This document shows positions 16,203 through 52,900 of a stretch of 64,000 nucleotides of DNA, piece after piece. This DNA comes from Pocillopora damicornis (Eukaryota). The number at the start of each line of letters is the position of its first letter. Within the stretch, counting starts at the first letter, position 1. The stretch covers positions 124,001 through 188,000 of the forward strand of contig NW_020844895.1 in NCBI RefSeq assembly GCF_003704095.1, written 5' to 3'. The position numbers were made by a program, and so were the translations under genes. The notes under the pieces are model-generated. The model made no database searches, had not been told where the DNA came from, and was given only the letters and a program-made list of their open reading frames with translations.

Positions 16203-19200
16203 ATGGCGACGTTGTCGAGATCTAAAGGGGCGCGATCTGGTAAGTTTTTCATAGATATTTTACATGCAAGTAAAATAGAAGGCTTTTCTCATCAGAGTGT
16301 TGGGTGTTTTCTTTTGAATAGCGTCTCCACTTAGGAACAGCACGCCAGACAATCTACGTCGTTCTGGAAGCTTTGGTAAATCGAGTGGGAAAAACTTACA
16401 TTTAGCTGCTTCGTTTGATTCCAAATCGAGGTGGGTAGATTTTTTAATTGCCACTGTTGCAATTTATTGCTGTGATCAAATTGGGTTTTAATTTTAATTA
16501 CGTAGGCCCACTGTGGAGGAACACCGTAAGGGAATAGCGCATGCACCTTTACCAATATTCTGTGCATTCTTCAGTTGCTACAACTATCAGTAGATGTTTG
16601 CACATCTTCTTAGATCTTGAGCTATTTTCATGTGTGTGTCTAGGATTCACGCCAAAATGACTTTTTGTTTTTAGAAATATCATTATGTTGACTTGACTTG
16701 CGGCCAAAAAAAATTTAAAAAGTATTTAAATAACCTCATTACTGATATTCATGTCAGAGATATGGGAAATTCAGGCTGCCAAACTTGGCACGAAATGAAT
16801 TTTAAATTTTTTCAACAAATCACCATTGGATTAAAGAAATGTAAAGCACGTTTTACTGAAGGATCTGTTTTGTATGAATTTGTATGAAAAGTCATGTTTA
16901 TGTGTAATTTAAGCTACAGACAACTATCTTTAAAGTTACTCTATATTATTGTGTTTGGATTAATTAGTTAAATACTGGATCTACCATGCAAAGTAAATTA
17001 ACACCTTCGATTCGATTGGTGTAATCAGTAATCAGTAATTTTAACTAGCAAACATAATAATAATAATTTAATAATTTACCAATTTATATAGCGCGTATTT
17101 ACATGTGCTGATCAATAGCGCTTTACAATCATATGTTTAAAACATCTAGTGTTTATAAAAATATATAAAGTAGAAAGTGAAAAATTTCATTATGACTTTT
17201 CTTTTTTCTTTTATTAACTTATGGACCATATTTCTGTCATCTTTGATTAATCTTCTATGTTTTGAGAAAATAACTTTTTGCTAGGATTCATTGGCTTCTT
17301 TCATGTATTGTGTCCCTTAGAGAAAGCCTTTAATTCACATGACTGACCAAGACAGAATTTCTCCTTACAATATCAAAGTAATATCAAGAAGACAATTGAT
17401 AAGAATCAAAAAAATTATCAACTAGGAATAATTGATTGATCCAATACCAAATTCTTGGAAATAACATGATAAGAAACACCAGAGAGAAATTACTCATGAG
17501 ATCTTTGGGAGTGAAAGGGTTAACTTACTCTTGGAATTTTCTGCTCTGTTATAGCACCTAGATCTAAGTCTCATATGAGAGAAGCACAATATGTAACCTC
17601 TGAATATGAATTATGTTTTTGTTCTCTTATAGAAAACATGCAAGATCTTCCTCTTCCACAACGGAAATTGGAAACATTGAAAATGAGTACATTAGGAATC
17701 TTCAACAACAGATTTACTTCCTTGAATTGGAAGCTAACTATCTGTATCCTTTATATGACAGTGATTTAAACCTTTAGTGTGGTAATTTCACTGCTTGAAT
17801 GCAGCAGAAAGGTTTCTTTAGAGGATTTTTTTTTTAAGTCTAGATTTTCTATGCCACACAATATAGAAAAAAATTGGCTTTTTATTCTGTAAGAGACTTT
17901 TCCAGAGAGAATATTTAAAATTAAATGAAAGTCTATACCTATGCATAACTAATTATTTTCTGGTGATCAGTCACCAGTTTTTCTCAGTTTTGTAAGGAAA
18001 TTATTGCATAACTGAAGGGAAAAGCAGAACAAAAATCTATTTTATTCAAGTGAATTGAATTGCAATGTCTCTTTTGCTCTCTATTGTGCATAGGCTCTAC
18101 ATGTTAATTTGGAAGGAGAACAAAGCAGTTTTAAAAGCCACTTACAAAGGGCTTCATATCATTCATTCCTTCAATTGTTTGATTGCATCTGTTTCCTTTC
18201 CTTAACTTGTAAATACTTCTTAAGACGAGAACAAGCAAGGAAAGCTTCAGGTAATTACTGGGAATGAAGAACATTTTGTATGAGATATTTTCTTTCGTCA
18301 CATGTTTTGTTTTGACCTATGATCAGGAGAGTCAGACAAAAGTACACAATTGACTTACAGGTCAAGGATAATTTTTCTTCTCATGAACCCATATTATGTC
18401 ATTTTAGATGGTTCTTTAAACCTTTGTATAGGTAATGACATGATTTCATGTGCAAGTTGGTGTAAATAAGCACATTAAGTAAATTTTTCAAAGTGAAAAA
18501 AAATTGCATGAGCCCATACTGATCTCAGTAATCTCTTTTCCCCTCACTGTGTCTTAACAACATCTTCATTTGTTATTGTAAGGAGAACTTACAGGCTGGA
18601 CGGGTCCAGAGTCAAAAGGGTTTCAACCTTGGTATATTATGTATTTGTATTACAGCCATTCCACCTCGCGTCACTGAGGAAGCAGATCGTATGATGCGAA
18701 AGCTACGAGATCTTCAGACTCAAGTGGATGAACGATCCTCAGATGTTGCCAGGAAAGAATCTCAAATGCACATGTTGGAGGCAGAGAAAGAATCTGCCAT
18801 CAAACGCCTCAGGGATGCTGAAGGTGAGATCTACTGGTAGTATGAAATACAAGATTGTTACTTCTCCCATTTCTCTTCTGCTCCATCTTCTGAACACTTT
18901 AACTCCCAATATCTGGTTGTTCATTCTCCCCTCCAGCTGTTACACATTTCCTTGTAAATTAGTTATAAGAATTTGGTGTAAGATCAATACAACAAATTCT
19001 ACCTGATAAGTTTGAACATTCTCATAACGTATTTGCTGAAAAATGTACAGGTATTTTAGGGAGAAGTTGCATGTCAATCACTATTGGGATTTAAAAGGTT
19101 AATTCAATTCCAATGAGAAGACTATTGCTCACAGTAGATGACAAAGAAATAACCTCCTCCCCCCATGCCCACACGTACACAAACCCATATACACACTCAA

Positions 19201-37972: not shown

Positions 37973-40900
37973 ATGGCATTATTACAGGTTTGTTTTGGCC
38001 ATTTTTATGTTTTCAGAATCATAAACCAGGGCTCAAAAATGAAAGTTTTCGTCTTGCAGTGGCGCCGGTTCAATTTTTTCGACAAGGAGGTTCTGAAAGA
38101 CCCCGGAACGACTCAGCCATTTACGGGTCTGAAGGTTGGTTCTTACAAACATAACTAGGATTTAGATGACGTTCATAAGAGTATGATTTTATTCAAATGA
38201 AACTTTTGCTCCCCATCTCTTTTTAAATCGATTCATAGCTTATGTCATCGATGAAAAAACTTCAAAATGGTTTGCAACCAGATCTTCTCCCATGCTGGGG
38301 GGTGGTGTGGGATGGGGGAGGGGGTGCCTTGCTCCATCTCACAAAAATTTGTTTAAGTTAAGTTTTTACTCTACAAATTACAGCAAATAACCAAATACTG
38401 CAAGGACATTGATTGGATGATCCCTATAAGTAGTCAAAATATTGCAGACTGACATAGATTTCATTGCAAAAGTGATTTTCTTAGTAATTTATTTTGTCCA
38501 ACATGGTGCTCAGTTTTAACAGGTTTTGAAAATATGTCTGTGTTTAATTTGGAATGAGAAAGTGAAAGTCTAATGAAAAATGAAATAAGAAACTGAAAAA
38601 AGTATTTTTGGCAATTTGCACAATTTCTAAACTAGGACAAATCTTCCAGCACTTGAGTGCTACAAGACATGTTTATAATCCTGACCTACATTACAGTCAA
38701 GTGTATACCTTTCAAAGCATGTTGTATATAGAAACAAGTTTTTGATGGCCTATCCTAAAAGAGACAATTTTTACTTCTACGTTGGCAACTGTTGAAAAAC
38801 AATTTCTTTTTTGTCCCATTTTTGGCCTATATTTTGTGGTCAATTCTTTTGTGAGTGTGGAAGCTGACAAGAGATTTTAATACCCATTAAGTTCAACTCT
38901 TTTATTTGGAATTTATCCCTGATACTTATAAAATCAAACCATCAATCTTGATACTATGGGTATATTAATTTTTGATGGGGGTGATGTGTTAGGGTGAGGT
39001 CATACAGCCTGTGGGGTGGGGGATGTGTGACTGTTTGGACACTGACTTGTGTTGATTTCATGGAGATCCATGAAAATGTCAATATTTGAATAGAATTCAT
39101 GTTTGTGTCATATAGGATACTAGTATCACAGCATGCACAAGTGGAAGAGGCCAGCTAGTTATTGGAGGCAAGTGATCTTTATTACAGATTGAGCTCAAAT
39201 TTTGCCATTATAGTTTATTTTAAAGATGCAAAAAGCATTTTAAAACATGACTTTCAAACAGAAAGTAGCTGGGGCTGTGAATAAGTTTAGAAGTAGAAGA
39301 CAGTCAACGCTTTAACACCTGAGATCTTATTAGTAATCTCTTTACTGTCTGCCATACAGTTCTTTTGATGTTAGTTTGGAGAATTTGGTAATGGATCAAC
39401 TAATAATTCCCTAAGTGATGTTTTCCCTTTTTCTTGTCACTTGTCTGCTTGATATTGTATTGATATTGTAAGGAGAAATTCTGTCTTGGTCACTCATGGG
39501 AGTTAAAAGGGTTAAAAAAACATAGGCTGTTAAGTACTGTGGATGCCATGTAGTTTTGTTTAATTATGCTCAAGACTGGCTAATTTAAGATTTAGGAAAA
39601 GTGATTATGTTTTTTTTTGTTTTTTTTATATAGTGCAGTGATTAAAGTATTTGGTTTTGGTATTTTGACAGATTCAGCTGGTTTTGTTCACTTCCTGGGC
39701 CGTGATTTAACCATCACATCTTTCCAGGCCTACGAAATGCGTGTGTCACATTTTTACCAACTGAAACAGCAAAATATTTTATTTACAGTTGGAGTAAGTG
39801 CTTCATACTCAGTAAAACAAATTAATTGTGTGAAATACTTCCCTTTACACCTTAACATCATTGTGTATATTCTCCTTACTCTTCTCTACACATAATTTGA
39901 TAGATAGTTTATTATCAAATAAAATACATTGCAGCCATAGGCTGAATTGCGTGCTTTTCACAATCATTGATTATATAAGACTATGTAAGACTACCTATTA
40001 CAAAAATGCTAAAACCTAAATAAAATTACTAATATAACTAATATAGCTAATATACAGCAGTGGAATGGCTAAAAATCTAGGTTAGCACACGCGCCCATAG
40101 CCGGTATAAATGAAAATTTGAAATGGTCAGTGCGAAAGCGCGGCATGTTAAAAACGCGCCGGTGTCTAGTATTGTAAGCTGAAAAAAGCCTATCTGGCAG
40201 CAAATTATATAATTTGTGAGATGGATTTGAGACAGACAAAAACAGATCCGTATATAATTTCATGCGTCTGTCATAGAGCGAAGCTAAACCGTGCCTGTCT
40301 AAAGAGTCATGGCATTCTAACAAGGAGAATTTATAAAACCATCAAGAGCTTCATTAGTTGCTGATCATTTCCTTTATTCTCGTGACTTAAACCTTTTATT
40401 CAGGGCTGATATTGTAAGGAGAAATTAGAATCTTGTCACTCTTAGGGATCAAAGGGTTAAGGAACCATTAAGATGTCACTGGACTACAGCTCTCTTTACA
40501 AATACAGGACAATTATTTTAAGCTTTTATCATTTCCAAGTATACTATGTATTCCTAAGACAAGCAGTGTGGTGATGGCAGTTTTGTACATCATGTCTTAA
40601 TGATATTGTTGAAAGTGTCCTCATGAATTGTAATCTTTTATCTCTAAAGGAAGATGAAGTAGGAGGAATTGATCCAATTATGAGAGTTTGGAATCTAGAC
40701 AAGGTTTGTTTTCTTATATTTTTAAATTACACCTTATTACTTATACTGTAGATAATTAGAGCACATGTGCACACACTTAGGTTTCTGCTTTTAACAGTTT
40801 CTCTATTAAGTTGTTTGCAAGCTCCTTTAAGAGTTTAGCAAACTCATTAAATTTTAGAGCAAGTTTTTCTAGGTAGTAAGGAAACTCCTCTAGGTTTTTC

Positions 40901-43900
40901 AGCAAAGATTGCTTACTTGATGGTGAACCCACCTAAATTATTGGAAAACTTGCTTCTGTTGTTAGTGAGCTCATCTTAGTTGTGAGGAGATTCATCTTAG
41001 TTGAGCTCACTTTTAGCTGTTAGCAAACTCATCCTTAGTAAGTTGTTAACAAACTGCTTGAAGTTATTAGGAAACTTATCAAAGTTGTTAGCAAACTCAT
41101 CTAAGTTGTTTGAAAGTGATGATATTCCATGTTAGTGTGTGTCTTTCACTGAATCGATGTTATCAATTTATGAGAATTGTTTTTCTCTAGATTGACAAGT
41201 ATGGAAATCCCGTTTGCTGTTGCATGCAGCGGCTTATTCCAGGAAACAAACCAGTTGCGGTACAATTAATTTTGTTTATGATTATTTTACATCATCTAAT
41301 TTCACAAAAATTTTCATTTTCTCTACTCAGTGCTTATAATTAAAGAAGTTATAGAAATTGGTCAATTTATCCTGAACTAAATATCTTAAAACCTGGCCTG
41401 GAGTGGTATATTGAGGACTTAAGAAAGGACTTTTATTCTGAATGGCAGGTGTCTTGTTTGGCATTGATGGAAAACTTGACACAGATGGCTGTAGGATTTG
41501 CCGATGGTACTGTTCTTGTATACAAAGGAGATATCACCCGTGATAGGTGAGAAAGGAAATGTCCTTGACTTAAAAATGCACTGCAAACAATGTATGCAGT
41601 AACTCTTTTTTAGAATACTGTCCCTCTTTCATTCTGAAGGAGATTATTGTTTGTGAAAGTTAATTATTTTTTGACAGTCCCAACAGAAGTCATTATGAAA
41701 ATTATTCATTACCAGTATCACACAAGTGGCCTATTTATTGCTAAAGAATTTTACTAGGTAACTTACTTTTCATTCAGAATGACAATACTTTTTTGTTTGA
41801 TAAACCTGGATAGATATAAAATTTGTGATGAAGACTACTTGAGTCTTAAAGCCGATAGCATTATGATGAATAGTAATTTACAGAACTGTGCAGTAGCTGT
41901 ATCTTCAACTGTAATCAACTATGCTGCTTTTATCTTTCAGCTTTCAGCCAAATTTGTCAGATCACTTACAATTCATTATCATTTTTGCTATCTCCAGCCT
42001 TGACTATTAATTTTTCTTCCTAATTAGCTGAGTGACTTACTTTGTGATTCGCTTTTATGAAGGGCAAAACATTTGAAACTTCAGCTTAAGAAACTCTTTA
42101 CCCCTGTCAGTGCGGTACCGCAGTTTTGTTAGAAATTTACCTTTATTCACTAGTGATTTACTACCAATACAATATTTTGTGGTTTATTTTTTGGTTATTT
42201 TTCCGCATCAACAATAACAGCTCGAAATATCATTGCCTATTACATTCTTTATTGTTTTAAGGCACACAAAGCAGAGAATTGTTCATCATGACAAGCATCC
42301 TGTAACAGGTACAGTTAGGTTTAGTTTTCTCCTTGAAAGGGTAAAAAAAAGGTGACATTGTTACAATTAAAATGGTACAACAATCAGTAATCAAAACAAG
42401 GCTCTATCTAGAAGAATAGATACTATGTGTTTGAGGGTGGGACTAGAATTTTAATTTTAATCAGTCTTTCTTTCATTTCTTCAGTATACATGGAGTTTTT
42501 GGAATAAATATTGATGTAATTGGTATTTCAATAATCATTAAATTTTTGGTAACAAAGTTAGAAGAGAGTGTATAGCTATAATTATAGGAATTATGTCTTC
42601 TTTGTCCTGAATGAGGGTATGATGATATTTTGCTATTTTTTGTCACCCACTGTAGGGCTTGCCTTCAAACAGACAAGTGATAGTGTAATTCTGTTCGTTG
42701 TGACAACTGAAACAGTTCTGTCATACAACACTTCAGCCAAAGATCGTCGAGTGAGTATTGATTTACGTTAGAAATCTTGTGGTTGTATGACAATATGATT
42801 TCAAACTTGAGGAGTTGTCATAGAGTTTCTAACCTTGTGATGCAGATTCTTTGCATATGTTCAAACTGAGTACAGTGTACCGTCCAAGTTGACATAAAAT
42901 TGAATTTTTTAAATCTCTGTTGTGGAGCTAAATCTCAGCATCCTTACAGTGATTACACGTCCTGTCTAGTATTCTTTTATCTTACAGTTGTTAAGACTTT
43001 CTCATGCATGGAGGTATTTTTGTAGCATTTTGCACATGTACTTTAAGCTCTCAAAAGTCAAGGTTTTGAACACAAGAAGGGTTGAACTTGTTTGTGCAAA
43101 GGAACTAATTTTTAGGTATGTTGCTAAGCCACAGCTGAGAAAAAGAGATTTTCTGGCCAAATTTGTCCTTGAAAATGCTGCTGTATTAGAGAGTATGCTA
43201 CAGCTCACAGTTATTTGTTTTTAAAAAATAGATTTTCATCAGTAGGATTCAGTATTTTATTTCTAAACTTTATCCTCAGGAAGTACTTGATGCTCATGGT
43301 TGTGAACTCCGTTGTTCAGTTATGAGTGATGCTTCACAAGAAAACCAATTTATTGTGGCTCGAAAAGAGGTCAGCCTTGTATACTCTAACTCAGTGTACC
43401 TGCCTTTAAATAATTCTCAATGTCTATTTTGGTACCTAAATGCACTCTTGAAAATTGACTATGAAATTGGCACTGATTTTTTTTCTCAGGCTTTGTATTT
43501 TTATCAAGTTGATGGCAGAGGTCCTTGCTTAGCATTTGAAGGTATTTCTGATATGTAAACAAATTTAAAATGTACTGTTATGCACTGTTATGATCAGGAG
43601 ATTCAATAAAAGCCAGTTACTGACTGTCTTTGGCCTTGTGTAAGACCTCTGACAGCAAGCAGGCTCATGATTGGGTTTTGCCTTATGGCCTCTTAAATGG
43701 ACAATGCTGCCCATTATACCATCAGCATCTGCCTTTGGAAAAATTTATTGAATCCGGCTTGATATCTTCTTTATATTACAAGTAAGAATAATGTTTTCTG
43801 CCTGTATTGGATGGTTAATTGATTGGAGTAATGGCAGGTTTATGAAATTTTCATAACTTAATGGCAATCCTAATTGATATGTATGTAAAGGAAATGGAGG

Positions 43901-46900
43901 GTTAGGATGTAGAACTTAATGTCTGGTCTACTGGTACAGCACATGAACCTAGAAAAATCTACAGCAGAATCTGAAAATTGCAAGAGGGCTGAATTTGACT
44001 CATCGATAGAGATAGTAGTCATGCTGTGCTTGGTTTGAGAACCTCTCCTTTTTTGCAGTGGTAATAACTTCAGTCTGTCAGAAGACATTATTTTCCTAGT
44101 CAGTAGCAAAGATTTGCCTGAGAAAAGAAATCCAAGTTAGAGCTTTCTAAGCTTTCTATGGAAGTGAAGCCTATAACTTTCATTCCAAGTTCCAACTTGT
44201 GGCATAAAAATTCTGACATATCTTTATTTTTTGTGACAAAATTTTCTCACAGGGCACATTGATTTTGAATTAACTATATTCCCTTAAAGTGATAAGCATC
44301 TAATTTCTCCAAAAAGTATTACCCCTGAATCAAATGTAACGGTCATGAGAATGAAGGCAATTATCCTGAACTTGATTGTTAGACAAATTCTCCTTGTAAG
44401 TACAATAGGAAATGTATAGGGAATGGTTAGGAGAACTTGCACATTGATGAAGGGATGTAAAGGGTTAGTAAGATATAAATCTGTTTTGATGCTGTGGCAG
44501 GTGAGAAACAGATGGTAACATGGTGGCGAGGGTATCTTGTTGTGGTCAGTAAGGATAACAAACAGATTCAAAGACCAGCAGTAGGGTAAGTTAAGAAATT
44601 CATAGAAGACTGTTAAATGGCGACTTTGAATAAACTTCAGCTAGGAGACTTCGAGGATAAATGCAACTCATTACTAAAGGCAGTAATGCTAAATAGATTT
44701 TTTTAAAAAAAGTGCTGTTCATGTTTTTTGTTGATATTTTGTTTTAAATATATAATATTGGCTATGCTATTCTTTTTGGTTTGCAGAGGAAGCTCTCAAC
44801 CAAGGAATGTCAATGTTGTCACTGTTTATGACATTCAAAACAAGTTTATAGGTAAGGGTTAGTGGATGCAGAGAAGAATGGAACCTTCTGATATTTGTCA
44901 AATAGTAGGAACATTGTGTGTGATTTATCACATCTTCTGTAAAGAAGAGGAGGTGATTTGTGATTTTCCTTTTTGCAGCTTTTACTGGGACATTCCAGGG
45001 TGTAATTGATGTGGTATGTGAATGGGGCAGCTTGTTTGTGATCACAATGGAAAATAAGGTAATTTCAAGTAATCTTCTCTTTTTGTATTAAATATGCCAA
45101 TAATTTATGTTGATTTTGCTATGATTTATTTTTATTTCAGGCCTGATAAAAATCTGATTTATGAAAAACAATTATTGCACCCTGCAAAACACATTACTTG
45201 AAATATCTCTTGCTGGAAAATGTTAATGTATTAGAAGGTGAATTGAGAGAACCTGCTCTGATTCCAAAAGCTTTTAAAGAACTTTAGGTGCATACATGTA
45301 GTAATTCTGTAAGGTATTTCCCTTTTTTGTGGACAGATTTTTCAGTTAGAGGAGAAGGATACGCAAACAAAGCTGGAAATTCTTTTTAAGAAAAATCTTT
45401 ATGCTATGGCAATCAGGTATTGTATACTTGAAAAATAAACATTGAGGTGTTTTTTAAGTATGGAAATTTTGATATGCATTGTAATGTTTTAGAAAATAAT
45501 TTTTATTTTCATTTTTCTTTTGTTATTCCTTTTTTCTTTTTGTTTTCCGTTTTGTTCATTTGTCTTTTGTTTGTTTCCTTAAAGCTTGGCAAAAAGTCAG
45601 CATTATTCTGATGGACTGATTGACATCTTTACACAATATGGAGATCACTTGTACAGGTAGTGACTGCAATAGAAAATTAAACTTGTGCAATTGGGTTTTT
45701 TTTTCTCAACTGTTCAAAGATGCATTCTCTGAGAATGTTGATCCTATTAGAGTCAGTCTTAGCATTGGGCCTATATGCTAGGGTTTCCTTGTTAGTCTGT
45801 GGAATGTGGAAGGACTTCTAGTTCATTCTTTTGAGGGATTTTGTCCATTCTTTGTTCATGCAGGGAATCTAGATACAACTTGAAGTTTCTCCTTCCAATA
45901 TAAATTATTCTTTATCCAGTATAAAGTTGATGTCAGTAGACAACCCTTTAAAGGGTGCTAAGTGATCATGTTGACCCTTTTGACACTCAGAGTGACCAGT
46001 AATTAGTTCCTCCTCACTTCATCACCTGTAAATCAAACACTAAGGTAGTGAGATTAAGGAAGTGATCCCCAACTAAAGGGGCCTTGTCAGCACCTTAGGA
46101 AATGTATAGAGAGCAGTGTAGAGACTATGTATAGTGATGTCAGGTTTGAAGTGTTAAGGCAAAAATCTTTAATCTAGCTGTCTGGATAATTATCAAATGT
46201 GGCTGATTATATTATAAGCATTTACTAAGTAAATACCTTTAATTAACTTACCATTAACTTAAATACCTGTATACTAAATACATGACTATCATTAAGAGAA
46301 CAATTATCTCTTTTCCCTCTCTTCCAGCAAAGGGGATCATGATGGAGCAATAAAACAGTACATTAAAACCATTGGTCATCTGGAGCCTTCTTATGTCATT
46401 CGTAAGGTATTGAACATTTTACAATGTGTATAATGTTATGTTTTGAAGAAATAGTTGCTCTGAACCAGATTGTGGTGCTCTCATCTAGGCCACTGTGTTC
46501 TAACATTCAGAACCATTTGAAATTTTTAAATAGTAAAGGAAAAAGATGAGGCATAGGGTGGAAATCAGGGCAAAACTAAGTTTTAGTTCAGTTTTAATCT
46601 CACATAAAATAAAATTTAGTTTTTCAATGATTTTCATTGTTGGCTTTGCCTTTATTATGCTTCACAATGCATAGCAAATCTCTTAAAGTTAAAATTGTCT
46701 CAAGCAGGTTTCCAAACGTTCCTTGTCAATGTTAAAAGAGAAATTTATTTGAGTTGTGGAATTAAGCTCAATATTTAAATTATAAGTTTTTCATTTTTAG
46801 TTTTTGGATGCTCAGAGAATTCACAACCTTACAGCGTATCTTCAGGTTAGTGGAAGAGTCAACTGCGCGCTGGTGATGTAATCATTCTGGTGTGGGCCTT

Positions 46901-49900
46901 TGTGCTACTATCCTCAGTCTCAATGACAACCAGCTGGTCACAATTTCGAACCTTGAACTATTGTTACTCAAAAATGTCATATAAAAAATATTGTTGTTTT
47001 ATTCATCCTTGGCTAGGCTCTCCACAAACAAGGTCTGGCCAACACAGACCATACCACCCTTCTTTTGAACTGTTACACCAAGCTGAAGGATGTCTCAATG
47101 TTGGATGAGTTTATCATGGTATGACTTAGGATCAGCAAATGAATTCTCCCATTCATACAAGTCTTATTATTGTTCTTTTGAGAATTTCTTGTCCAATCTG
47201 GATGACTCTGTATTTCCATCACATTAAGCTTGACACTACAGTGTAAGAATTTACATTCATTTCTCCTTTTTTTCCTATCAGACTGACAGGGAATTAAACT
47301 TTGATGTTGAAACTGCCATCAAGGTAAATGCTTGCACTTCTGAGCTAAAAAAATTGTGTGAGAATGGTACATTTTAAATCTTCTCAGGATCTTCATTTTT
47401 TTTCCTGCAATATTTGTTCCTAATTTTAGGTGTGTCGTCAGGCAGGATATTTCAAGCATGCGGTGTATCTAGCGGAGAAATACGAACAACACGACTTGTA
47501 AGTTTAAGGAAAAAGGATCGAATGTTTGTAACATCAGTACGCACATTCTCTGTACTGTTCTCATTTTATATCCTAAGGTACTGACAGGGAGAATTTGCTA
47601 ACAATCGAGAGCCTCTTAAATAAGTCATCACTTTTAATATTCTCGTGACCTCATTGTTTGATCTCCCTCCCCACCCCTCCCTCACTGGTGGTAAATTGAG
47701 AGTTAATTTTCTATAATCCCTCCTTTAGAGTCCCTTGGCGACAACTGGTACCCCTCCCTGCCGTTCCCACTAAAAACCAAATCCAAAATCCTTCGAGCCC
47801 NNNNNNNNNNNNNNNNNNNNNNNNNNNNNNNNNNNNNNNNNNNNNNNNNNNNNNNNNNNNNNNNNNNNNNNNNNNNNNNNNNNNNNNNNNNNNNNNNNNN
47901 NNNNNNNNNNNNNNNNNNNNNNNNNNNNNNNNNNNNNNNNNNNNNNNNNNNNNNNNNNNNNNNNNNNNNNNNNNNNNNNNNNNNNNNNNNNNNNNNNNNN
48001 NNNNNNNNNTATGCTCGGGAAAGTGGTTTAATCTCTTGCATTATTGTTGACTCGAATTTCCCTCTAATAGATATTTAAAGATTCAACTGGAAGACTTGAA
48101 GGATTACCAGAGAGCGCTGTCCTACATTGGAAAACTAGGATTTTATGAGGTACATTAAATTTGTGTTTCGACTTTTAAGTGGTAGATACTGAAAGAATGA
48201 AGAAGTAAAGCTTTTCTGTCTTCATTTCAAGGCTGAAGGAAACATGAAAAAATATGGAAAGAGTTTGGTGAATGCTGTCCCTGATGAATCAACAAAGCTG
48301 CTAAAAGTTTTATGTACGGATTACAAGCCGCAGCGACTTCATGAACGTGAGTTTTGTTCGAGCATTTCGATTTTGTGTGGTCAACTCAAAATCAAAGGAA
48401 TGACGTCAGGCAATTGGAACCGGGACTATCGTCTTAAAGGGTCAGTGAGAAATAACTGAACGCAAAAACTTGCAAACTTCCTAAAGCGCGGGAAAACACA
48501 AATTACCAAGTCGCTGTTGATTTTAGCTTGCATCTGATTGGCTGGGTAGGCGACGTGAGTTTCGTAGACCATTCACATAGCGAAACAATGCAGTCCTGGT
48601 TGACTCCCAAAACGAGAAAAAAATCATATAATTTCAAGCTGACGAATCGATTTTTGCGTTTTGAATGAGTGAAATTTTGAATGACTTCACTTCTCCTTGC
48701 AATCTGGTGATGTTATGGATCTTGTAGATTTTAAATCGTTATTCTCCGAAGGTAAATTGAGTTGGACAGATTTTAGAGAGTCGGGAAGGATAATATTACT
48801 GTTAACGTTGTTGTAGGAACAGTTTCCGGTTCTGTCACACCTGTCAGTGCTGGGGTTTATCAGTCCTTCACAACCGCTCTCGGTAAGCTGCTGTTGCTAT
48901 TCAGTCACCATCCATGGCTCGTTACTCGTCGCAAACCACGTCATACTCACGTCAAAGTCACAGTCAGCGTCACATCTCGTCCTCTGACATTTCTTGCATT
49001 GTTTACGTCAAATTTTACCTCACTGTATACTTCAGACATATGTTTTGCCTTGGTATACATCATGTTATTTTTTGCGTCAATGCATAACCTCCATCTCCCC
49101 CATGGAACACAGCATTACTTCTTTCAAGCCTCACTCGCCTCGAAGGACTGTTCTCCATGAAATTTTACCTTCGTGGTAGACTTTCAAATGGTTCTAAGTC
49201 ATGTCTTACTCGTCACGTTCACTCTCCAATCTGTGTTAGCATTGGTTCTTTTGAAAGACCGTTAGCGATGGTTTGTGTCTCTGGAAAAATTTGGCTCAAA
49301 TTTGTCAATTTTATCCCATTCACTACGTGTCGATCTTATCAATTTTTTTTCTCTTCTTTTTGGTTTATTTCCTTCAGTTTGGTATTTTTGCTGTCTTACC
49401 AAACAGATATTTTAGATTTATTTTAATATTTTTCTTGTCATAGTTAATCCGCCTCGTTGGAATATTATTGTGACACTTAGAAAACAATGAATAGGAAAAA
49501 TACTGATCTGTATGAATCGAACCAAACGATACACTGTTTTTCTGGGTTCTCACAATAACACACTGGAAAGTGTCAAGTAAAACTTGAAAATGAACTCTCC
49601 GCAGAATATCAGTTATTTCTTTGTTGCCATTTCACTCCTGTAATTCAGCCATTTACAGAAACACAAGCAGTGATCCTTTAACCTCAAAGAGTGATTAGAA
49701 TCTAATTTCTCCTTTCAGTAGCACTCATGAATCAAACATTTGGGTCACGAGAATAAAGGGAATGATTACCTCTTGATTGTCAAACAAATTCTCCTTGCCA
49801 TTGCCATTGGAAACGTGAAGAGAACAGTACGGAGAATATACATGTAATGTTAGGGTGTAAAGGGTTAATGTTGTCTGAAGGTTCCGCCAAGTCTGACCAA

Positions 49901-52900
49901 AAGAACCTTCACAAATTATGATTTGTTTATGGTGATTTTGCTGCTGTCGTGTATGTGTGATATTTAGATCCTGCATCAGATATGGAGAGGAAGATTTACA
50001 AGGCTCGCGCCGAAGAGTTTATTCACATCTTTGTTCATCAAAAAGCCAAACTGATTGAGTTTCTGGAACATATGGTGCAGGTACGGAGTCACTTTCAAAT
50101 CATTACTGTGTCTGGGTTCTTTCAAAATTTGTATAGGAGATACGAGATTCTAGTCAGCGGAAAGGGCTTCATGTAAGAGGCTAAAGTTCGAACACGAACA
50201 ACGTCATCGTGTTGTGTTCTTGAGCAATCAATTGAGTTGATAATGTTTATTGGCTACCGTAGACAGTTTCAAAGCTGACGTTTCGGGCGTTAGCCCTTTG
50301 TCAGAACGAATGTAGGATATCATGTCAGCCGAGATACTTCCGATAGCAAACAAAAATTGTCGAGGGTGGTCGAGCACAGCTTTTCACAGCCCGCGCCGAT
50401 CCTTTTTGCCCTGTGGTTTTGTTTGATGGAAAAGTCTTACACAGGAAGCCTGAGATTTTGTGATAGATCAGTTATTAAACTTCAAGGAAAATGATTACAT
50501 TTTTCTCAAAGTATTTTTACATTTGTTCGAGTGTGTTTTTTTTTCTTTTTTGAAGGTTCAGCCTAATTCGTCTAACTTGGTGTATAACACTCTCCTTGAG
50601 CTGTATCTGAATGATGCTGCTCGTCAGAAGAATGTGGAAGCGCAAGTCGAACATGAACGTAAAGCTCTTGATTTGCTGAAAAATGTGGAGGTATGATCAT
50701 GAAAATTGAATGCGTATTCATGGACAAATCAATCGTACAACTCACAATTTACTGCCGTACATTTCCTTGTAATTTAGAGTAGAGATACGATTTTCTATTC
50801 ATAAAACACTCTATGGTCGTTAAGGTTATCTGTTGTGTTATATTCCTGCCCACCGAATGATTTATCATCACTTTTTTAGGGAGTGTTTTCTTGGTTGAGA
50901 TTATGGCCGATATATTTTTACCTCTTCTGATTGAATGAGCATGCTGTCTTCGTACCTTGTCTTTCAGCGGTCTTCGATGCGCAGGCATCGATTGACGAAG
51001 CTTCTAGATCAATGTCAGTATCTGAGTAACTGCGCCCTACCCCTCCCCCTACCCAACGACAGTCAACTGATGACAAGTTAAAGTTAATGATGAGCTAGGG
51101 TAGGTGCGAAGTTGCTCAGATACAGACATTAACCCAGGCTTCCTATGAAGTGTATCCACAGACAGACGCTGAAATGCTCACTTTGCAGCATCATTGATTT
51201 GCGAGTGTTCTGAGGGGTTTTTCTTTTTGCATTAATCTTTTCAAAGGCACGTTACGACATTGACCACGCCCTGGTACTAGCACAGATGCACCACTTCAAG
51301 GCTGGTATCCTGTATCTGTACGAAAAAGCCAAACTGTAAGTTCAAATCGAAGAAATTTTTAAGTTTAGACTTATTTGAAATACGCCTCAAGCTGTATTTA
51401 TGCCAGAAAGTTTTCCTTCCTCGCACTCTCTCAGTTTTATTACTTTTATCTTTAATTTGGATAGATACCAACAAATCCTTCATTACCATATGGAGCAGAA
51501 CGAATATAGTCACGTGATAGACACGTGCAAAAAATATGGGTAAGTTTCGGGAACTTTTGAGAATGTTGGGGAGAATCTGTGCTATGTTACCGATTATGTT
51601 ATAGTGGGAACAAGCGAAAAAGCGGCGGTGGTCATTAGTGTTTGCACTTAGGGCGGGAAAATTGTGTAACCGGCCTTATATGGCGGGAAATTTTGTGACT
51701 GGCGCCAAGAGCGGTAAAGCATGCCAGCAGCAAGGGCGGGAAAACATACGTGCACTTGGGGCGGGAAGATGTGTTATCGGTTTTGCGCTTGCGCTAGAGA
51801 CAGAGTCAATGGCACGAAGAGCTCAAGACCAAGTCGCGATGTAAGTTTTTGCTATGCTTCTTATAACTCAAATACTTAAATTTGCCTTAAAATTTTATTT
51901 TTAGGACGTCAGATCCAAGTTTGTGGGTGCAAGCTCTCTCTTACTTTGCCCGACGTGAAACAGACTGCAAGTCCCAAATCAAGGAAGTGCTTGATCATAT
52001 CCTTTTATAGAGTTTCTTAGGTTCCATGTAGTGCTATGAAGCATTTATGTTTTATTGTGCATGATCGTGAGCTTAGACCGTGAAAGCGTTTTTCTCATCG
52101 CTTTTTATTGCGATTATCACTTTGCGTTATAGTATTGTCAGTTATAGATTGTGGTTCTTGTGCGCGTGTTGGCATGCTCTGTATGTAAGAAGACCTCGTA
52201 ACTAGGTGTATTGTTAGGTAAGACTGATATTTCCTTGACCGTGAGTCAAATATCGACCGTGGAAACCTCATGTCTCCTCTACTCGTGTTGCAAAACTTGG
52301 CGCACAATTCAACAGCCACATTGGCAGTGGTGAAGGTAATAAACAATTACCACTATGAGGGAAGCGAAATTTATCGTCATGAATTAGCGCCAATACTCCT
52401 CCCGGTGACGTTGTCAGCCTTAGTGAAAGTCGGTAAGGGGGGGCGAGTAAAGAAAGGCGAGGAGGCTTTGTGTACTCAAAGTTGAAAAAAAAAATGCAAC
52501 ATGTTTTAATCGCGGGAAAACGCAAGTGACCAAGTTAGGATTGGTTTTACTATTGCATCTGATTGGTCGAGATAGTGGCGCGAGTGTTTTAGACCAATCA
52601 TGGAGCGAAGTAAAGCGAAACCAAAACAATCAGAATCAATTTCAACGCTAAATTTAAAATCGCTCAATCTGAGGGAAAGTAGCTTTAAAATCTGAATTTT
52701 TTAGCTCAGTATTGGAAATGAATGAAATTCTAGAAATTTGCCTTATTTCTAGTTTGAAGTGAAATAATCTGGGCCTTATCACAATGTTCTTGTCAACTTT
52801 ACGTGAACTACGAGCATGTTTCTTTTAAACCTCTTGTTAATCAATTTATGCGACTTTGACTACCTACTGAGAACTTCTCTTTTACAGGACTACATCATAC

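What the first reader, a model, noticed from the sequence alone, without database searches (positions are those of the whole stretch)
51997..52249. Minor-spliceosome intron with rare AT-AA ends in VPS11
Seen: no in-frame GT donor at the end of the exon (...GTG CTT GAT C). Instead there is a perfect U12 5' site ATATCCTTTT, a U12 branch box TTCCTTGAC 10 nt from the 3' end, and a terminal CAA. Joining C to AT ATC GAC CGT gives EVLDHIDRGNLMSPLLV, collinear with human VLKHIENKNLMPPLLV as I recall it. The nearby AG at 52244-52245 would frameshift. Known: U12 introns are usually GT-AG or AT-AC, and AT-AA is a rare tolerated variant. Inference: this could be a slow, rate-limiting splicing step in a HOPS/CORVET core gene, and standard gene predictors will probably mis-model it.
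Basis: partly seen in the sequence, partly recalled or inferred. Interest (0 to 1): 0.75.

Follow-up and report, generated by a model that had tools for sequence, protein, structure and literature searches.

The report
AT-AA minor-spliceosome intron in coral VPS11
A coral's VPS11 gene has one intron with the signals of the rare second (minor) spliceosome and unusual AT...AA ends; RNA reads show it is removed, but it belongs to an already described intron class.

Summary
Window 51997-52249 (253 nt, + strand, phase 1) starts ATATCCTTTT, carries TTCCTTGAC ending 10 nt before its 3' end, and ends CAA.

- **RNA:** reads join 51996 to 52250: 7 raw reads from 4 start places in X21 and one contig in X16. 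All other introns laid are GT..AG.
- **DNA:** a contig from X2 keeps A at 52249.
- **Gene:** VPS11. The exon peptides are exact substrings of the NCBI Pocillopora damicornis VPS11 protein, which already reads ...EVLDHIDRGN....
- **Machinery:** the genome has U11, U12 and U6atac genes, a near-threshold U4atac match and a CENATAC-family gene.
- **Orthologous intron**: AT..AA in 9 of 9 coral-like contigs with the 3' end visible. A second coral has a spliced transcript. One spiralian group is AT..AC (24 of 24). Bivalve-like and alvinellid-like contigs are U12-type GT..AG.

This is an old U12-type intron that has switched subtype between lineages. AT-AA is the commonest non-canonical minor-intron type (PMC10639083), so it is a new member of a known kind. 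Rate-limiting splicing is not shown. Mis-modelling by predictors is partly borne out: an older Stylophora model skips the upstream exon.

The parts
39116..58004 (+). VPS11 gene, as far as exon-wise matches reach. The first exon may lie further upstream.
   Evidence: tblastn of NCBI proteins P0001 and P0029 against the window, one HSP per exon. Pfam matches exon by exon to PEP5_VPS11_N, TPR_PEP5_VPS11, RING and VPS11_C, in order.
51905..51996 (+). Upstream exon (92 nt), ...TSDPSLWVQALSYFARRETDCKSQIKEVLD plus C, the first base of the split His codon.
   Evidence: RNA joints 51538->51904 (cut +1) and 51996->52250. Pfam TPR_PEP5_VPS11 profile positions 311-338. The peptide is an exact substring of P0043.
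51997..52249 (+). U12-type intron, 253 nt, phase 1, AT..AA ends.
   Evidence: sequence. 'skips 253, AT..AA' in X16 (1 contig, depth 109.7) and X21 (7 reads, 4 starts, longest shorter side 59 nt).
51997..52006 (+). U12-type 5' splice site ATATCCTTTT.
   Evidence: By my reading of the printed letters it is complementary to the 5' end of this genome's U11 (UAAAAGGG...).
52231..52239 (+). Branch-site box TTCCTTGAC. The inferred branch A is 52238, 11 nt before the last intron base.
   Evidence: This genome's U12 has the GAGUAAGGAAAAU stretch. The branch A itself is inferred, not mapped.
52248..52249 (+). Terminal AA of the intron.
   Evidence: X2 DNA contig record 20 covers 51660-52339 with only 2 other letters, and X2's two listed differences in that span, 51675 and 51718, match that count. 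The same terminal AA is seen in 9 of 9 coral-like loci.
52250..52335 (+). Downstream exon (86 nt), AT + IDRGNLMSPLLVLQNLAHNSTATLAVVK.
   Evidence: RNA joints 51996->52250 and 52333->52886 (cut +2). The peptide is an exact substring of P0043.
52218..52223 (+). Cryptic U2-type donor AG|GTAAGA inside the intron. One X16 contig uses it and then skips exon 52250-52335.
   Evidence: joint 52215->52886 (cut +2), GT..AG, depth 37.8, record 13 with 11 other letters. The retained stretch reads H-I-L-L-stop in frame.
52244..52245 (+). Unused AG, 6-7 nt after the inferred branch A.
   Evidence: No joint ending here is listed. The equivalent AG is the acceptor taken by the old Stylophora model P0129.

Best explanation
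Window 51997-52249 is a genuine U12-dependent (minor-spliceosome) intron of the AT-AA subtype in the VPS11 gene of a pocilloporid coral.

Proposed mechanism, which is inferred rather than shown:
- U11 pairs with ATATCCTTTT at the 5' end. U6atac replaces it later.
- U12 pairs with TTCCTTGAC and bulges A52238 as the branch point.
- As in other U12-type introns, the 3' cut is set mainly by distance from the branch point, here 11-12 nt, and not by an AG. The too-close AG at 52244-52245 is therefore passed over and cleavage falls after CAA.

The exons join C|AT into a His codon and give the conserved ...EVLDHIDRGNLMSPLLV.

The intron position is old. It holds U12-type introns in corals (AT-AA), a spiralian group (AT-AC), and bivalve-like and alvinellid-like animals (GT-AG). 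The coral AT-AA state is one more case of subtype switching, and it is kept across distant coral lineages.
For: SHOWN
- Sequence features as described.
- RNA joint 51996->52250 in 2 of 3 RNA runs laid. X21 has 7 raw reads from 4 starts, all with the first mate on the - strand, as expected for a + strand RNA. X16 has 1 contig. The third run, X15, has no depth there. The joint is absent from the DNA run X2.
- The other joints listed in the laid stretch are all GT..AG, apart from one GT..GG row with one letter between that duplicates 51538->51904. None of the other constitutive introns has a TCCTTRAY box.
- A at 52249 in the X2 DNA contig.
- Retention gives a stop after 4 codons.
- NCBI protein P0043 (Pocillopora damicornis VPS11) contains both exon peptides with H between them.
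- 19 of 19 orthologues have no gap at the junction. The junction residue is H in 13, Y in 2, Q in 2 and N in 2.
- The genome has U12 (100 bits), U6atac (104.6), U11 (92.7) and U4atac (52.2, cut-off 53), plus a CCDC84/CENATAC-family gene.
- Coral-like loci: 6 of 6 visible 5' ends start AT. 9 of 9 visible 3' ends end AA, with the branch box at the same distance as in the window.
- In a second coral, the exon 40-mers of locus L037 lie directly adjacent in the spliced contig L006.
- Loci L036, L043 and L075 have GTATCC/GTATCT...CCTTAAC...AG introns at the same codon position with no repeat at the ends. That fixes the cut register.

INFERRED: dependence on U11/U12/U4atac/U6atac, the branch adenosine, and 3' site choice by distance.
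Against: - No experiment here shows that the minor spliceosome removes the intron.
- The exact cut register cannot be read from the mRNA, because ATATC stands at both ends.
- U4atac scores just under Rfam's cut-off.
- The genome's only U6atac gene has GCCGA where most species have the 5'-splice-site-pairing AAGGA. This is the known cnidarian 'CC variant', whose pairing with the 5' site is unexplained (PMC2396436, passages read).
- The X16 joint has only 25 nt on its shorter side.
- X2 is kept as contigs, not raw reads.
Confidence: 0.93

Rival explanations
1. It is an ordinary AT-AC minor intron, and the A at 52249 is an assembly error.
For: AT-AC is the usual A-type ending. The spiralian group has AC at the same intron end in 24 of 24 loci.
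Against: The X2 DNA contig record 20 spans 51660-52339 with only 2 other letters, and X2's two listed differences in that span, 51675 and 51718, match that count. 9 of 9 coral-like loci with the end visible, 6 distinct flanks among them, also end AA.
Confidence: 0.01
2. The intron is removed by the major (U2-type) spliceosome despite its odd ends, as is known for a few U2-type AT-AC introns.
For: No functional test was run here. The lone U6atac gene lacks the AAGGA box.
Against: - The 5' site is a full ATATCCTTT match and the branch box TTCCTTGAC sits 10 nt from the end.
- The sequence shows no pyrimidine tract there.
- The same position holds introns with the same two boxes in at least four other animal groups.
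- The U11 and U12 genes carry the matching stretches.
Confidence: 0.03
3. The joint is a reverse-transcription or assembly artefact at the 5-nt direct repeat ATATC, and there is no real intron.
For: Non-canonical joints flanked by short direct repeats are a classic template-switch pattern. 'Both = 5' fits that.
Against: - The unspliced form stops after 4 codons.
- The joined form is the conserved protein in 19 of 19 orthologues.
- The joint is seen in two runs of different studies and in a second coral.
- The bivalve-like and alvinellid-like introns at this position have no end repeat.
- The repeat is explained by the U12 consensus ATATC meeting the codons for His-Ile.
Confidence: 0.01
4. The true cut lies in another register, for instance +2, which would make the ends AT..AT.
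For: The mRNA is the same for registers 0 to +5. AT-AT minor introns exist in human and mouse (PMC1557818, Table 2, read as passages).
Against: - Only register 0 puts the intron's first base at the A of ATATCC, as the U12 5'-site consensus requires.
- Register 0 is the position of the unambiguous GT..AG introns in L036, L043 and L075.
- Register 0 gives the same branch-to-end spacing as the coral-like loci (12 by the count); the AT..AC group is mostly at 13.
Confidence: 0.03

Closest known systems
U12-type introns with AT-AA ends (A-type, AT-AN class). Examples are human and mouse RASGRP4 and human MSH3 in Sheth et al. 2006, PMC1557818, Tables 2 and 3.
   Same: ATATCCTT 5' site, TCCTTRAY branch box close to the 3' end, A as the last base, and a non-zero phase. 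Subtype differs between lineages at one orthologous position, as in Table 3 of that paper (for example MSH3, AT-AA in human and AT-AC in mouse).
   Different: The host gene (VPS11) and the lineage (stony corals). Here the AA ending is shared by distant coral lineages, Pocillopora-like and Acropora-like.
Canonical AT-AC U12-type introns
   Same: Everything except the last base. The spiralian contigs have exactly this form at the same codon position.
   Different: The last intron base is A, not C. The first-to-last base contact would therefore be A-A rather than A-C. That contact comes from my general knowledge and was not tested.
CENATAC-dependent A-type minor introns of human cells (de Wolf et al. 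2021, PMC8280824)
   Same: AT-AN ends. A CCDC84/CENATAC-family gene is present in this genome. One contig shows cryptic major-type splice-site use inside the intron, an outcome that paper describes for such introns.
   Different: No data here on dependence on CENATAC or on retention level. In X21 the bins wholly inside the intron are empty.

Membership tests
U12-type (minor spliceosome) intron | 5' splice site matching [A/G]TATCCTT from the first intron base | tested here: met
   ATATCCTTTT at 51997-52006, directly after the RNA-defined exon end.
U12-type (minor spliceosome) intron | Branch box TCCTTRAY close to the 3' end (about 10-15 nt from the branch A), with no pyrimidine tract | tested here: met
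   TTCCTTGAC at 52231-52239. The inferred branch A, 52238, is 11 nt before the last intron base. The stretch between is CGTGAGTCAA. The distance range is from my own knowledge of the family.
U12-type (minor spliceosome) intron | The intron is removed in vivo at the predicted borders | tested here: met
   Joint 51996->52250 in X21 (7 reads, 4 starts) and X16 (1 contig). The register is fixed only by motif and comparison.
U12-type (minor spliceosome) intron | The organism has U11, U12, U4atac and U6atac | tested here: met
   92.7, 100 and 104.6 bits are over the cut-offs. U4atac scores 52.2 against a cut-off of 53.
U12-type (minor spliceosome) intron | Splicing depends on the minor snRNPs | not testable with these tools
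   Needs knock-down or blocking oligonucleotides.
U12-type (minor spliceosome) intron | The orthologous position holds U12-type introns in other lineages | tested here: met
   Coral-like AT..AA, spiralian AT..AC (14 of 14 visible 5' ends ATATCCTT, 24 of 24 visible 3' ends AC), and bivalve-like and alvinellid-like GT..AG with U12 boxes.
AT-AA subtype | First two bases AT and last two AA in genomic DNA | tested here: met
   Window sequence. The X2 DNA contig shows no change at 52248-52249. 9 of 9 coral-like loci end AA.
VPS11 (HOPS/CORVET core subunit) | N-terminal propeller, VPS11 clathrin-type repeat region, C-terminal RING and the VPS11_C motif, in that order | tested here: met
   Pfam scan piece by piece: 9 of 10 pieces hit these families in collinear order. 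The 5 exon peptides I translated in the right frame are all exact substrings of NCBI's Pocillopora damicornis VPS11. The function of the protein was not tested.

The most novel reading that the evidence does not exclude
The terminal A is kept on purpose. Stony corals would have held the weaker AT-AA form of this old minor intron across their deepest split because inefficient, CENATAC-type-dependent removal sets the dose of the HOPS/CORVET core subunit VPS11. Failure would lead to a stop codon or to cryptic-donor exon skipping. That would link minor-spliceosome activity to endolysosomal traffic, and so perhaps to symbiont handling.
Probability: 0.07. Interest if true: 0.5.

Novelty: new member of a known kind. 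Interest (0 to 1): 0.25.

Why it matters
It is a clean, RNA-backed example of a non-canonical minor-intron ending outside vertebrates and plants.

- It carries a built-in comparative series at one codon position: AT-AA, AT-AC, GT-AG, and loss of the intron. That is useful for training and testing intron classifiers and gene predictors.
- One published coral gene model is wrong at exactly this spot.
- It does not change what is known about minor splicing. AT-AA endings, subtype switching and high minor-intron density in Acropora corals are all in print (PMC1557818, PMC10639083).

Tried and rejected
- **PDB search.** One VPS11 exon piece against solved structures gave 0 matches at E up to 10. 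Dropped.
- **Representatives search.** A two-exon open stretch gave mostly fragments: 41 hits, of which P0001 was the useful one.
- **Short exon queries.** I then aligned 78-aa stretches of 13 natural orthologues and searched with that alignment.
- **Second U12 site at 54160.** I wondered whether ATATCCTTT there marks a second minor intron of VPS11. It lies inside the last intron, which is GT..AG (54122-57908). Rejected.
- **Odd U6atac box.** I wondered whether GCCGA means a broken gene or a missed second copy. A DNA search found one copy only. An 18-nt canonical motif with up to 2 mismatches gave 24 hits against 25 for the reversed control, so nothing real. The variant is the published cnidarian 'CC variant' (PMC2396436). 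Explained.
- **Literature.** 'VPS11' with 'minor intron' gave 0 papers. 'VPS11' with 'U12' gave 2 papers, both irrelevant by title and abstract.
- In one search two exon pieces were translated in the wrong frame and say nothing. In one search the anchors for L042 and L045 were spurious, L069 starts at the contig end, and L071, L079 and L080 have short U2-type introns nearby. These six of the 46 printed loci are left out of the group counts.
- **Not done.**
  - intronIC scoring.
  - Raw DNA reads at 52249; only contigs were laid.
  - A vertebrate or human comparison of the intron.
  - The joined window exons were never searched or folded; all protein searches were exon by exon or with natural database proteins.
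  - Supplements that may already list this intron were closed: Table S1 of PMC10639083, the datasets of PMC8280824, and the U12DB and IAOD lists.
Full report
**What is in the sequence**

- The upstream exon ends ...GAA GTG CTT GAT C at 51996.
- The next bases are ATATCCTTTT (51997-52006).
- TTCCTTGAC lies at 52231-52239, followed by CGTGAGTCAA up to 52249.
- The next exon starts ATATCGACCGTGGAAAC at 52250.

Joining C to AT gives a His codon, so the intron is phase 1. ATATC stands at both ends, so the same mRNA results from six cut registers (0 to +5).

However, a GT nine bases upstream (51987) joined to the AG at 52244-52245 would be in frame. It would remove V-L-D-H, add S-N, and lose a Leu that is invariant in the 13 orthologue segments. 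One search lists no such joint.

The motifs by themselves are not rare in 64 kb.
- RTATCCTTT: 4 hits against 1.52 expected, and 8 of 100 shuffles reach 4.
- TCCTTRAY: 14 hits against 11.6 expected.

The signal is their placement at an RNA-defined junction.

**The gene**

Ten open pieces of the + strand were scanned against Pfam one by one. Nine hit PEP5_VPS11_N, TPR_PEP5_VPS11 (profile positions 44-76, 140-173, 200-254, 250-284, 282-309, 311-338, in genomic order), RING-type fingers and VPS11_C. The 28-aa downstream exon alone hit nothing.

A search of protein representatives with a two-exon open stretch gave P0001. A word-index search with the C-terminal part of P0001 gave 281 proteins at E up to 1e-10 among 1077 candidates. 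The source names call P0001 VPS11 of Stylophora pistillata and P0043 VPS11 isoform X2 of Pocillopora damicornis.

Five window exon peptides translated in the right frame are exact substrings of P0043. P0043 reads ...KSQIKEVLDHIDRGNLMSPLLV... across the junction. The window therefore comes from Pocillopora or something very near it, and the public model already holds this splice product.

tblastn of P0001 on the window maps residues 387-420 to 51900-52001 and 418-447 to 52246-52335, with no residue missing. In an alignment of 19 named orthologues from corals to Physarum and Balamuthia, none has a gap at the junction. The junction residue is H in 13, Y in 2, Q in 2 and N in 2.

In a rough motif count over 120 fetched homologues, the spacing from the W..AL motif to the LxPPL/LxSPL motif was:

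| Spacing (residues) | Proteins |
|---|---|
| 30, as in P0043 | 87 |
| 29 | 11 |
| 31 | 1 |
| 230 | 1 |
| motif not found | 20 |

**RNA and DNA evidence**

The look-up of sequencing runs listed 24 runs, 20 of which hold the stretch or a part of it; 6 of those 20, plus one raw-read run added by sample, are RNA. I laid three RNA runs of three studies (X15, X16, X21) and one DNA run (X2) on 51100-53500.

The joint 51996->52250 ('skips 253, AT..AA, both 5') is seen as follows.
- X21: 7 raw reads from 4 start places, with up to 59 nt on the shorter side. All have the first mate on the - strand, as expected for a + strand RNA in a stranded library.
- X16: one contig, depth 109.7, shorter side 25 nt.
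- X15: no depth between 51829 and 52395, so it says nothing.
- X2, the DNA run: no such joint.

Of the nine joint rows, seven are GT..AG. One is a GT..GG row with one letter between, which duplicates the 51538->51904 junction and probably reflects a variant at 51905. One is this AT..AA joint.

A script check of the introns shows that only 51997-52249 has a U12 5' site, and none of the other constitutive introns has a TCCTTRAY box.

For the DNA base, X2 contig record 20 covers 51660-52339 with only 2 other letters. X2's two listed differences in that span are at 51675 and 51718, which matches that count. So 52249 is A there. X2 is kept as contigs, not raw reads, so this is strong but not final.

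**Is splicing slow?**

In X21 the three bins that lie wholly inside the intron (52072-52314 overlaps the exon, so 52072-52233) have depth 0, and the two edge bins share exon bases. The joint count of 7 is in the range of the neighbours (2 to 11). So steady-state polyA RNA shows no retention.

Two observations point the other way.
- One X16 contig (record 13, depth 37.8, 11 other letters in 244 nt) keeps 51972-52217. It then uses a GTAAGA donor at 52218 to reach the acceptor at 52888, skipping exon 52250-52335. The retained part reads H-I-L-L-stop, so this form is non-productive.
- In another coral, contig L021 keeps the U12 intron and the intron before it, while the intron after it is already gone.

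These are anecdotes. The rate-limiting idea remains untested.

**The machinery**

The window's own genome (234.35 Mb in 4393 contigs) has the following:

| snRNA | Score (bits) | Rfam cut-off |
|---|---|---|
| U12 | 100 | 53 |
| U6atac | 104.6 | 33 |
| U11 | 92.7 | 39 |
| U4atac | 52.2 | 53 |

- U12 carries GAGUAAGGAAAAU. By my reading of the letters it can pair with UUCCUUGAC using one G-U pair and a bulged A.
- U11 starts UAAAAGGG, complementary to UCCUUUUA of the 5' site (the pairing is my reading, not a computed result).
- The single U6atac gene has GCCGA in place of AAGGA. This is the 'CC variant' reported for cnidarians, Trichoplax and others, whose pairing with the 5' site the authors call difficult to explain (PMC2396436, passages).
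- A CCDC84/CENATAC-family gene is present: 4 collinear exon matches, best 61.2 bits. In human cells this factor favours AT-AN minor introns (PMC8280824, passages).

**The same intron elsewhere**

A metagenome-contig scan used an alignment of 13 natural orthologue segments. 152 stretches matched a pattern, and 75 loci were confirmed. One locus, L011, looked mammalian and possibly human, so I left it out.

I anchored the junction on the aligned codons. Group labels rest on exon-wise BLAST against named proteins. Termini were then counted.

| Group | Loci | 5' ends visible | 3' ends visible | Note |
|---|---|---|---|---|
| Coral-like | 12 | 6 of 6 start AT (ATATCCTT 3, ATATCCTA 2, ATATTCTT 1) | 9 of 9 end AA (6 distinct flanks) | Box TTCCTTAA[T/C] at the same distance as in the window. 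L039 carries an exon peptide found only in the Acropora protein among the seven named proteins tested. |
| Spiralian, not resolved | 24 | 14 of 14 ATATCCTT | 24 of 24 AC | Best named hits are Paralvinella (downstream exon) and Mytilus (upstream exon). |
| Bivalve-like | 2 (L036, L043) | GTATCCTT, GTATCTTT | AG | CCTTAAC box. No repeat at the ends. |
| Alvinellid-like | 1 (L075) | GTATCCTA | AG | CCTTAAC box. No repeat at the ends. |
| Anemone-like | 1 (L054) | not on the contig | AG | |

Cephalochordate-like (L012-L014) and sponge-like (L023, L029) contigs read straight through the position, so they have no intron there.

For a second coral, the last 40 nt of the upstream exon of L037 and the first 40 nt of its downstream exon lie directly adjacent in the spliced contig L006, at 1613-1652 and 1653 onward. 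The 839-nt AT..AA intron is therefore removed there too.

**What is known**

- Sheth et al. 2006 count AT-AA U12-type introns as 3 in human, 4 in mouse and 1 in Arabidopsis. They also list subtype switches between human and mouse (PMC1557818, Tables 2 and 3, read as passages).
- Larue and Roy 2023 find AT-AA to be the most common non-canonical minor-intron ending in animals and plants. Non-canonical endings make up about 3.8% of conserved animal minor introns. They note that Acropora has a minor-intron density above that of most vertebrates (PMC10639083, passages).
- U12DB (PMC1635337) I saw only as a search listing with the start of its abstract.
- No paper in the library pairs VPS11 with 'minor intron' (0 papers). 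For VPS11 with U12, 2 papers came up, both irrelevant by title and abstract. Supplementary lists could not be opened and may hold it.

**Gene models**

The NCBI models P0043 and P0001 cross the junction correctly. An older Stylophora model, P0129, reads ...DTCKKYG|ESNIDRGN.... It skips the whole upstream exon, takes the AG four bases before the true 3' end, and runs on into the receptor-like gene nested in the last intron.

**Verdict**

- Real, well supported, and correctly read by the first stage.
- A new member of a known kind, not a new mechanism.
- Interest is modest. The best part is the comparative series at one codon position and the conservation of the AA ending across corals.
- The joined window exons were never submitted to any search.

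Noticed in passing
window 54122-57908, with an ORF at 56083-57429 (+): The last VPS11 intron (GT..AG, about 3.8 kb) holds a 449-codon open frame on the same strand. It looks like a seven-helix receptor by eye; I did not test this. The old Stylophora model P0129 fuses VPS11 to the equivalent gene. It was also noted earlier in the scan (s1-775495).
   Followed up: partly
L003:1501-1625 (-), which is G000:C1986:362277-362401: The only U6atac gene of the genome has GCCGA where most species have the 5'-splice-site-pairing AAGGA. It matches the published 'CC variant' of cnidarians (PMC2396436). How it pairs with ATATCCTT sites is still open in that paper.
   Followed up: yes
window 17744-18224 (+): GTATCCTTT at 17744 and TCCTTAAC at 18199, followed by ...CTTAAG. 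This is a second, GT..AG, U12-type candidate in another gene. It was noted earlier in the scan (s1-775533). I laid no RNA on it.
   Followed up: partly
window 52553-52625 (inside the intron 52336-52887): Reads and contigs of three runs (X15, X21, X2) break off here with loose ends, and X2 DNA depth rises to 271 against about 80 beside it. This is probably a dispersed repeat that is also transcribed elsewhere.
   Followed up: no
L021:1-2035: A contig of another coral keeps the U12 intron (914 nt) and the intron before it, while the intron after it is already removed. It looks like a partly spliced transcript and is a hint on the order of intron removal.
   Followed up: partly
window 51905: In X21, 11 reads cross the 51539/51906 junction with an A in place of the G at 51905, beside 9 reads with the reference form. 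This is probably an allele at the first base of the exon.
   Followed up: no
G000:C2502:800950-809166 (-): A CCDC84/CENATAC-family gene: four collinear exon matches, best 61.2 bits. In human cells this factor favours AT-AN minor introns.
   Followed up: partly
L012-L014, L023, L029: Cephalochordate-like and sponge-like contigs have no intron at this VPS11 position. That suggests loss of the old minor intron in those lines.
   Followed up: partly
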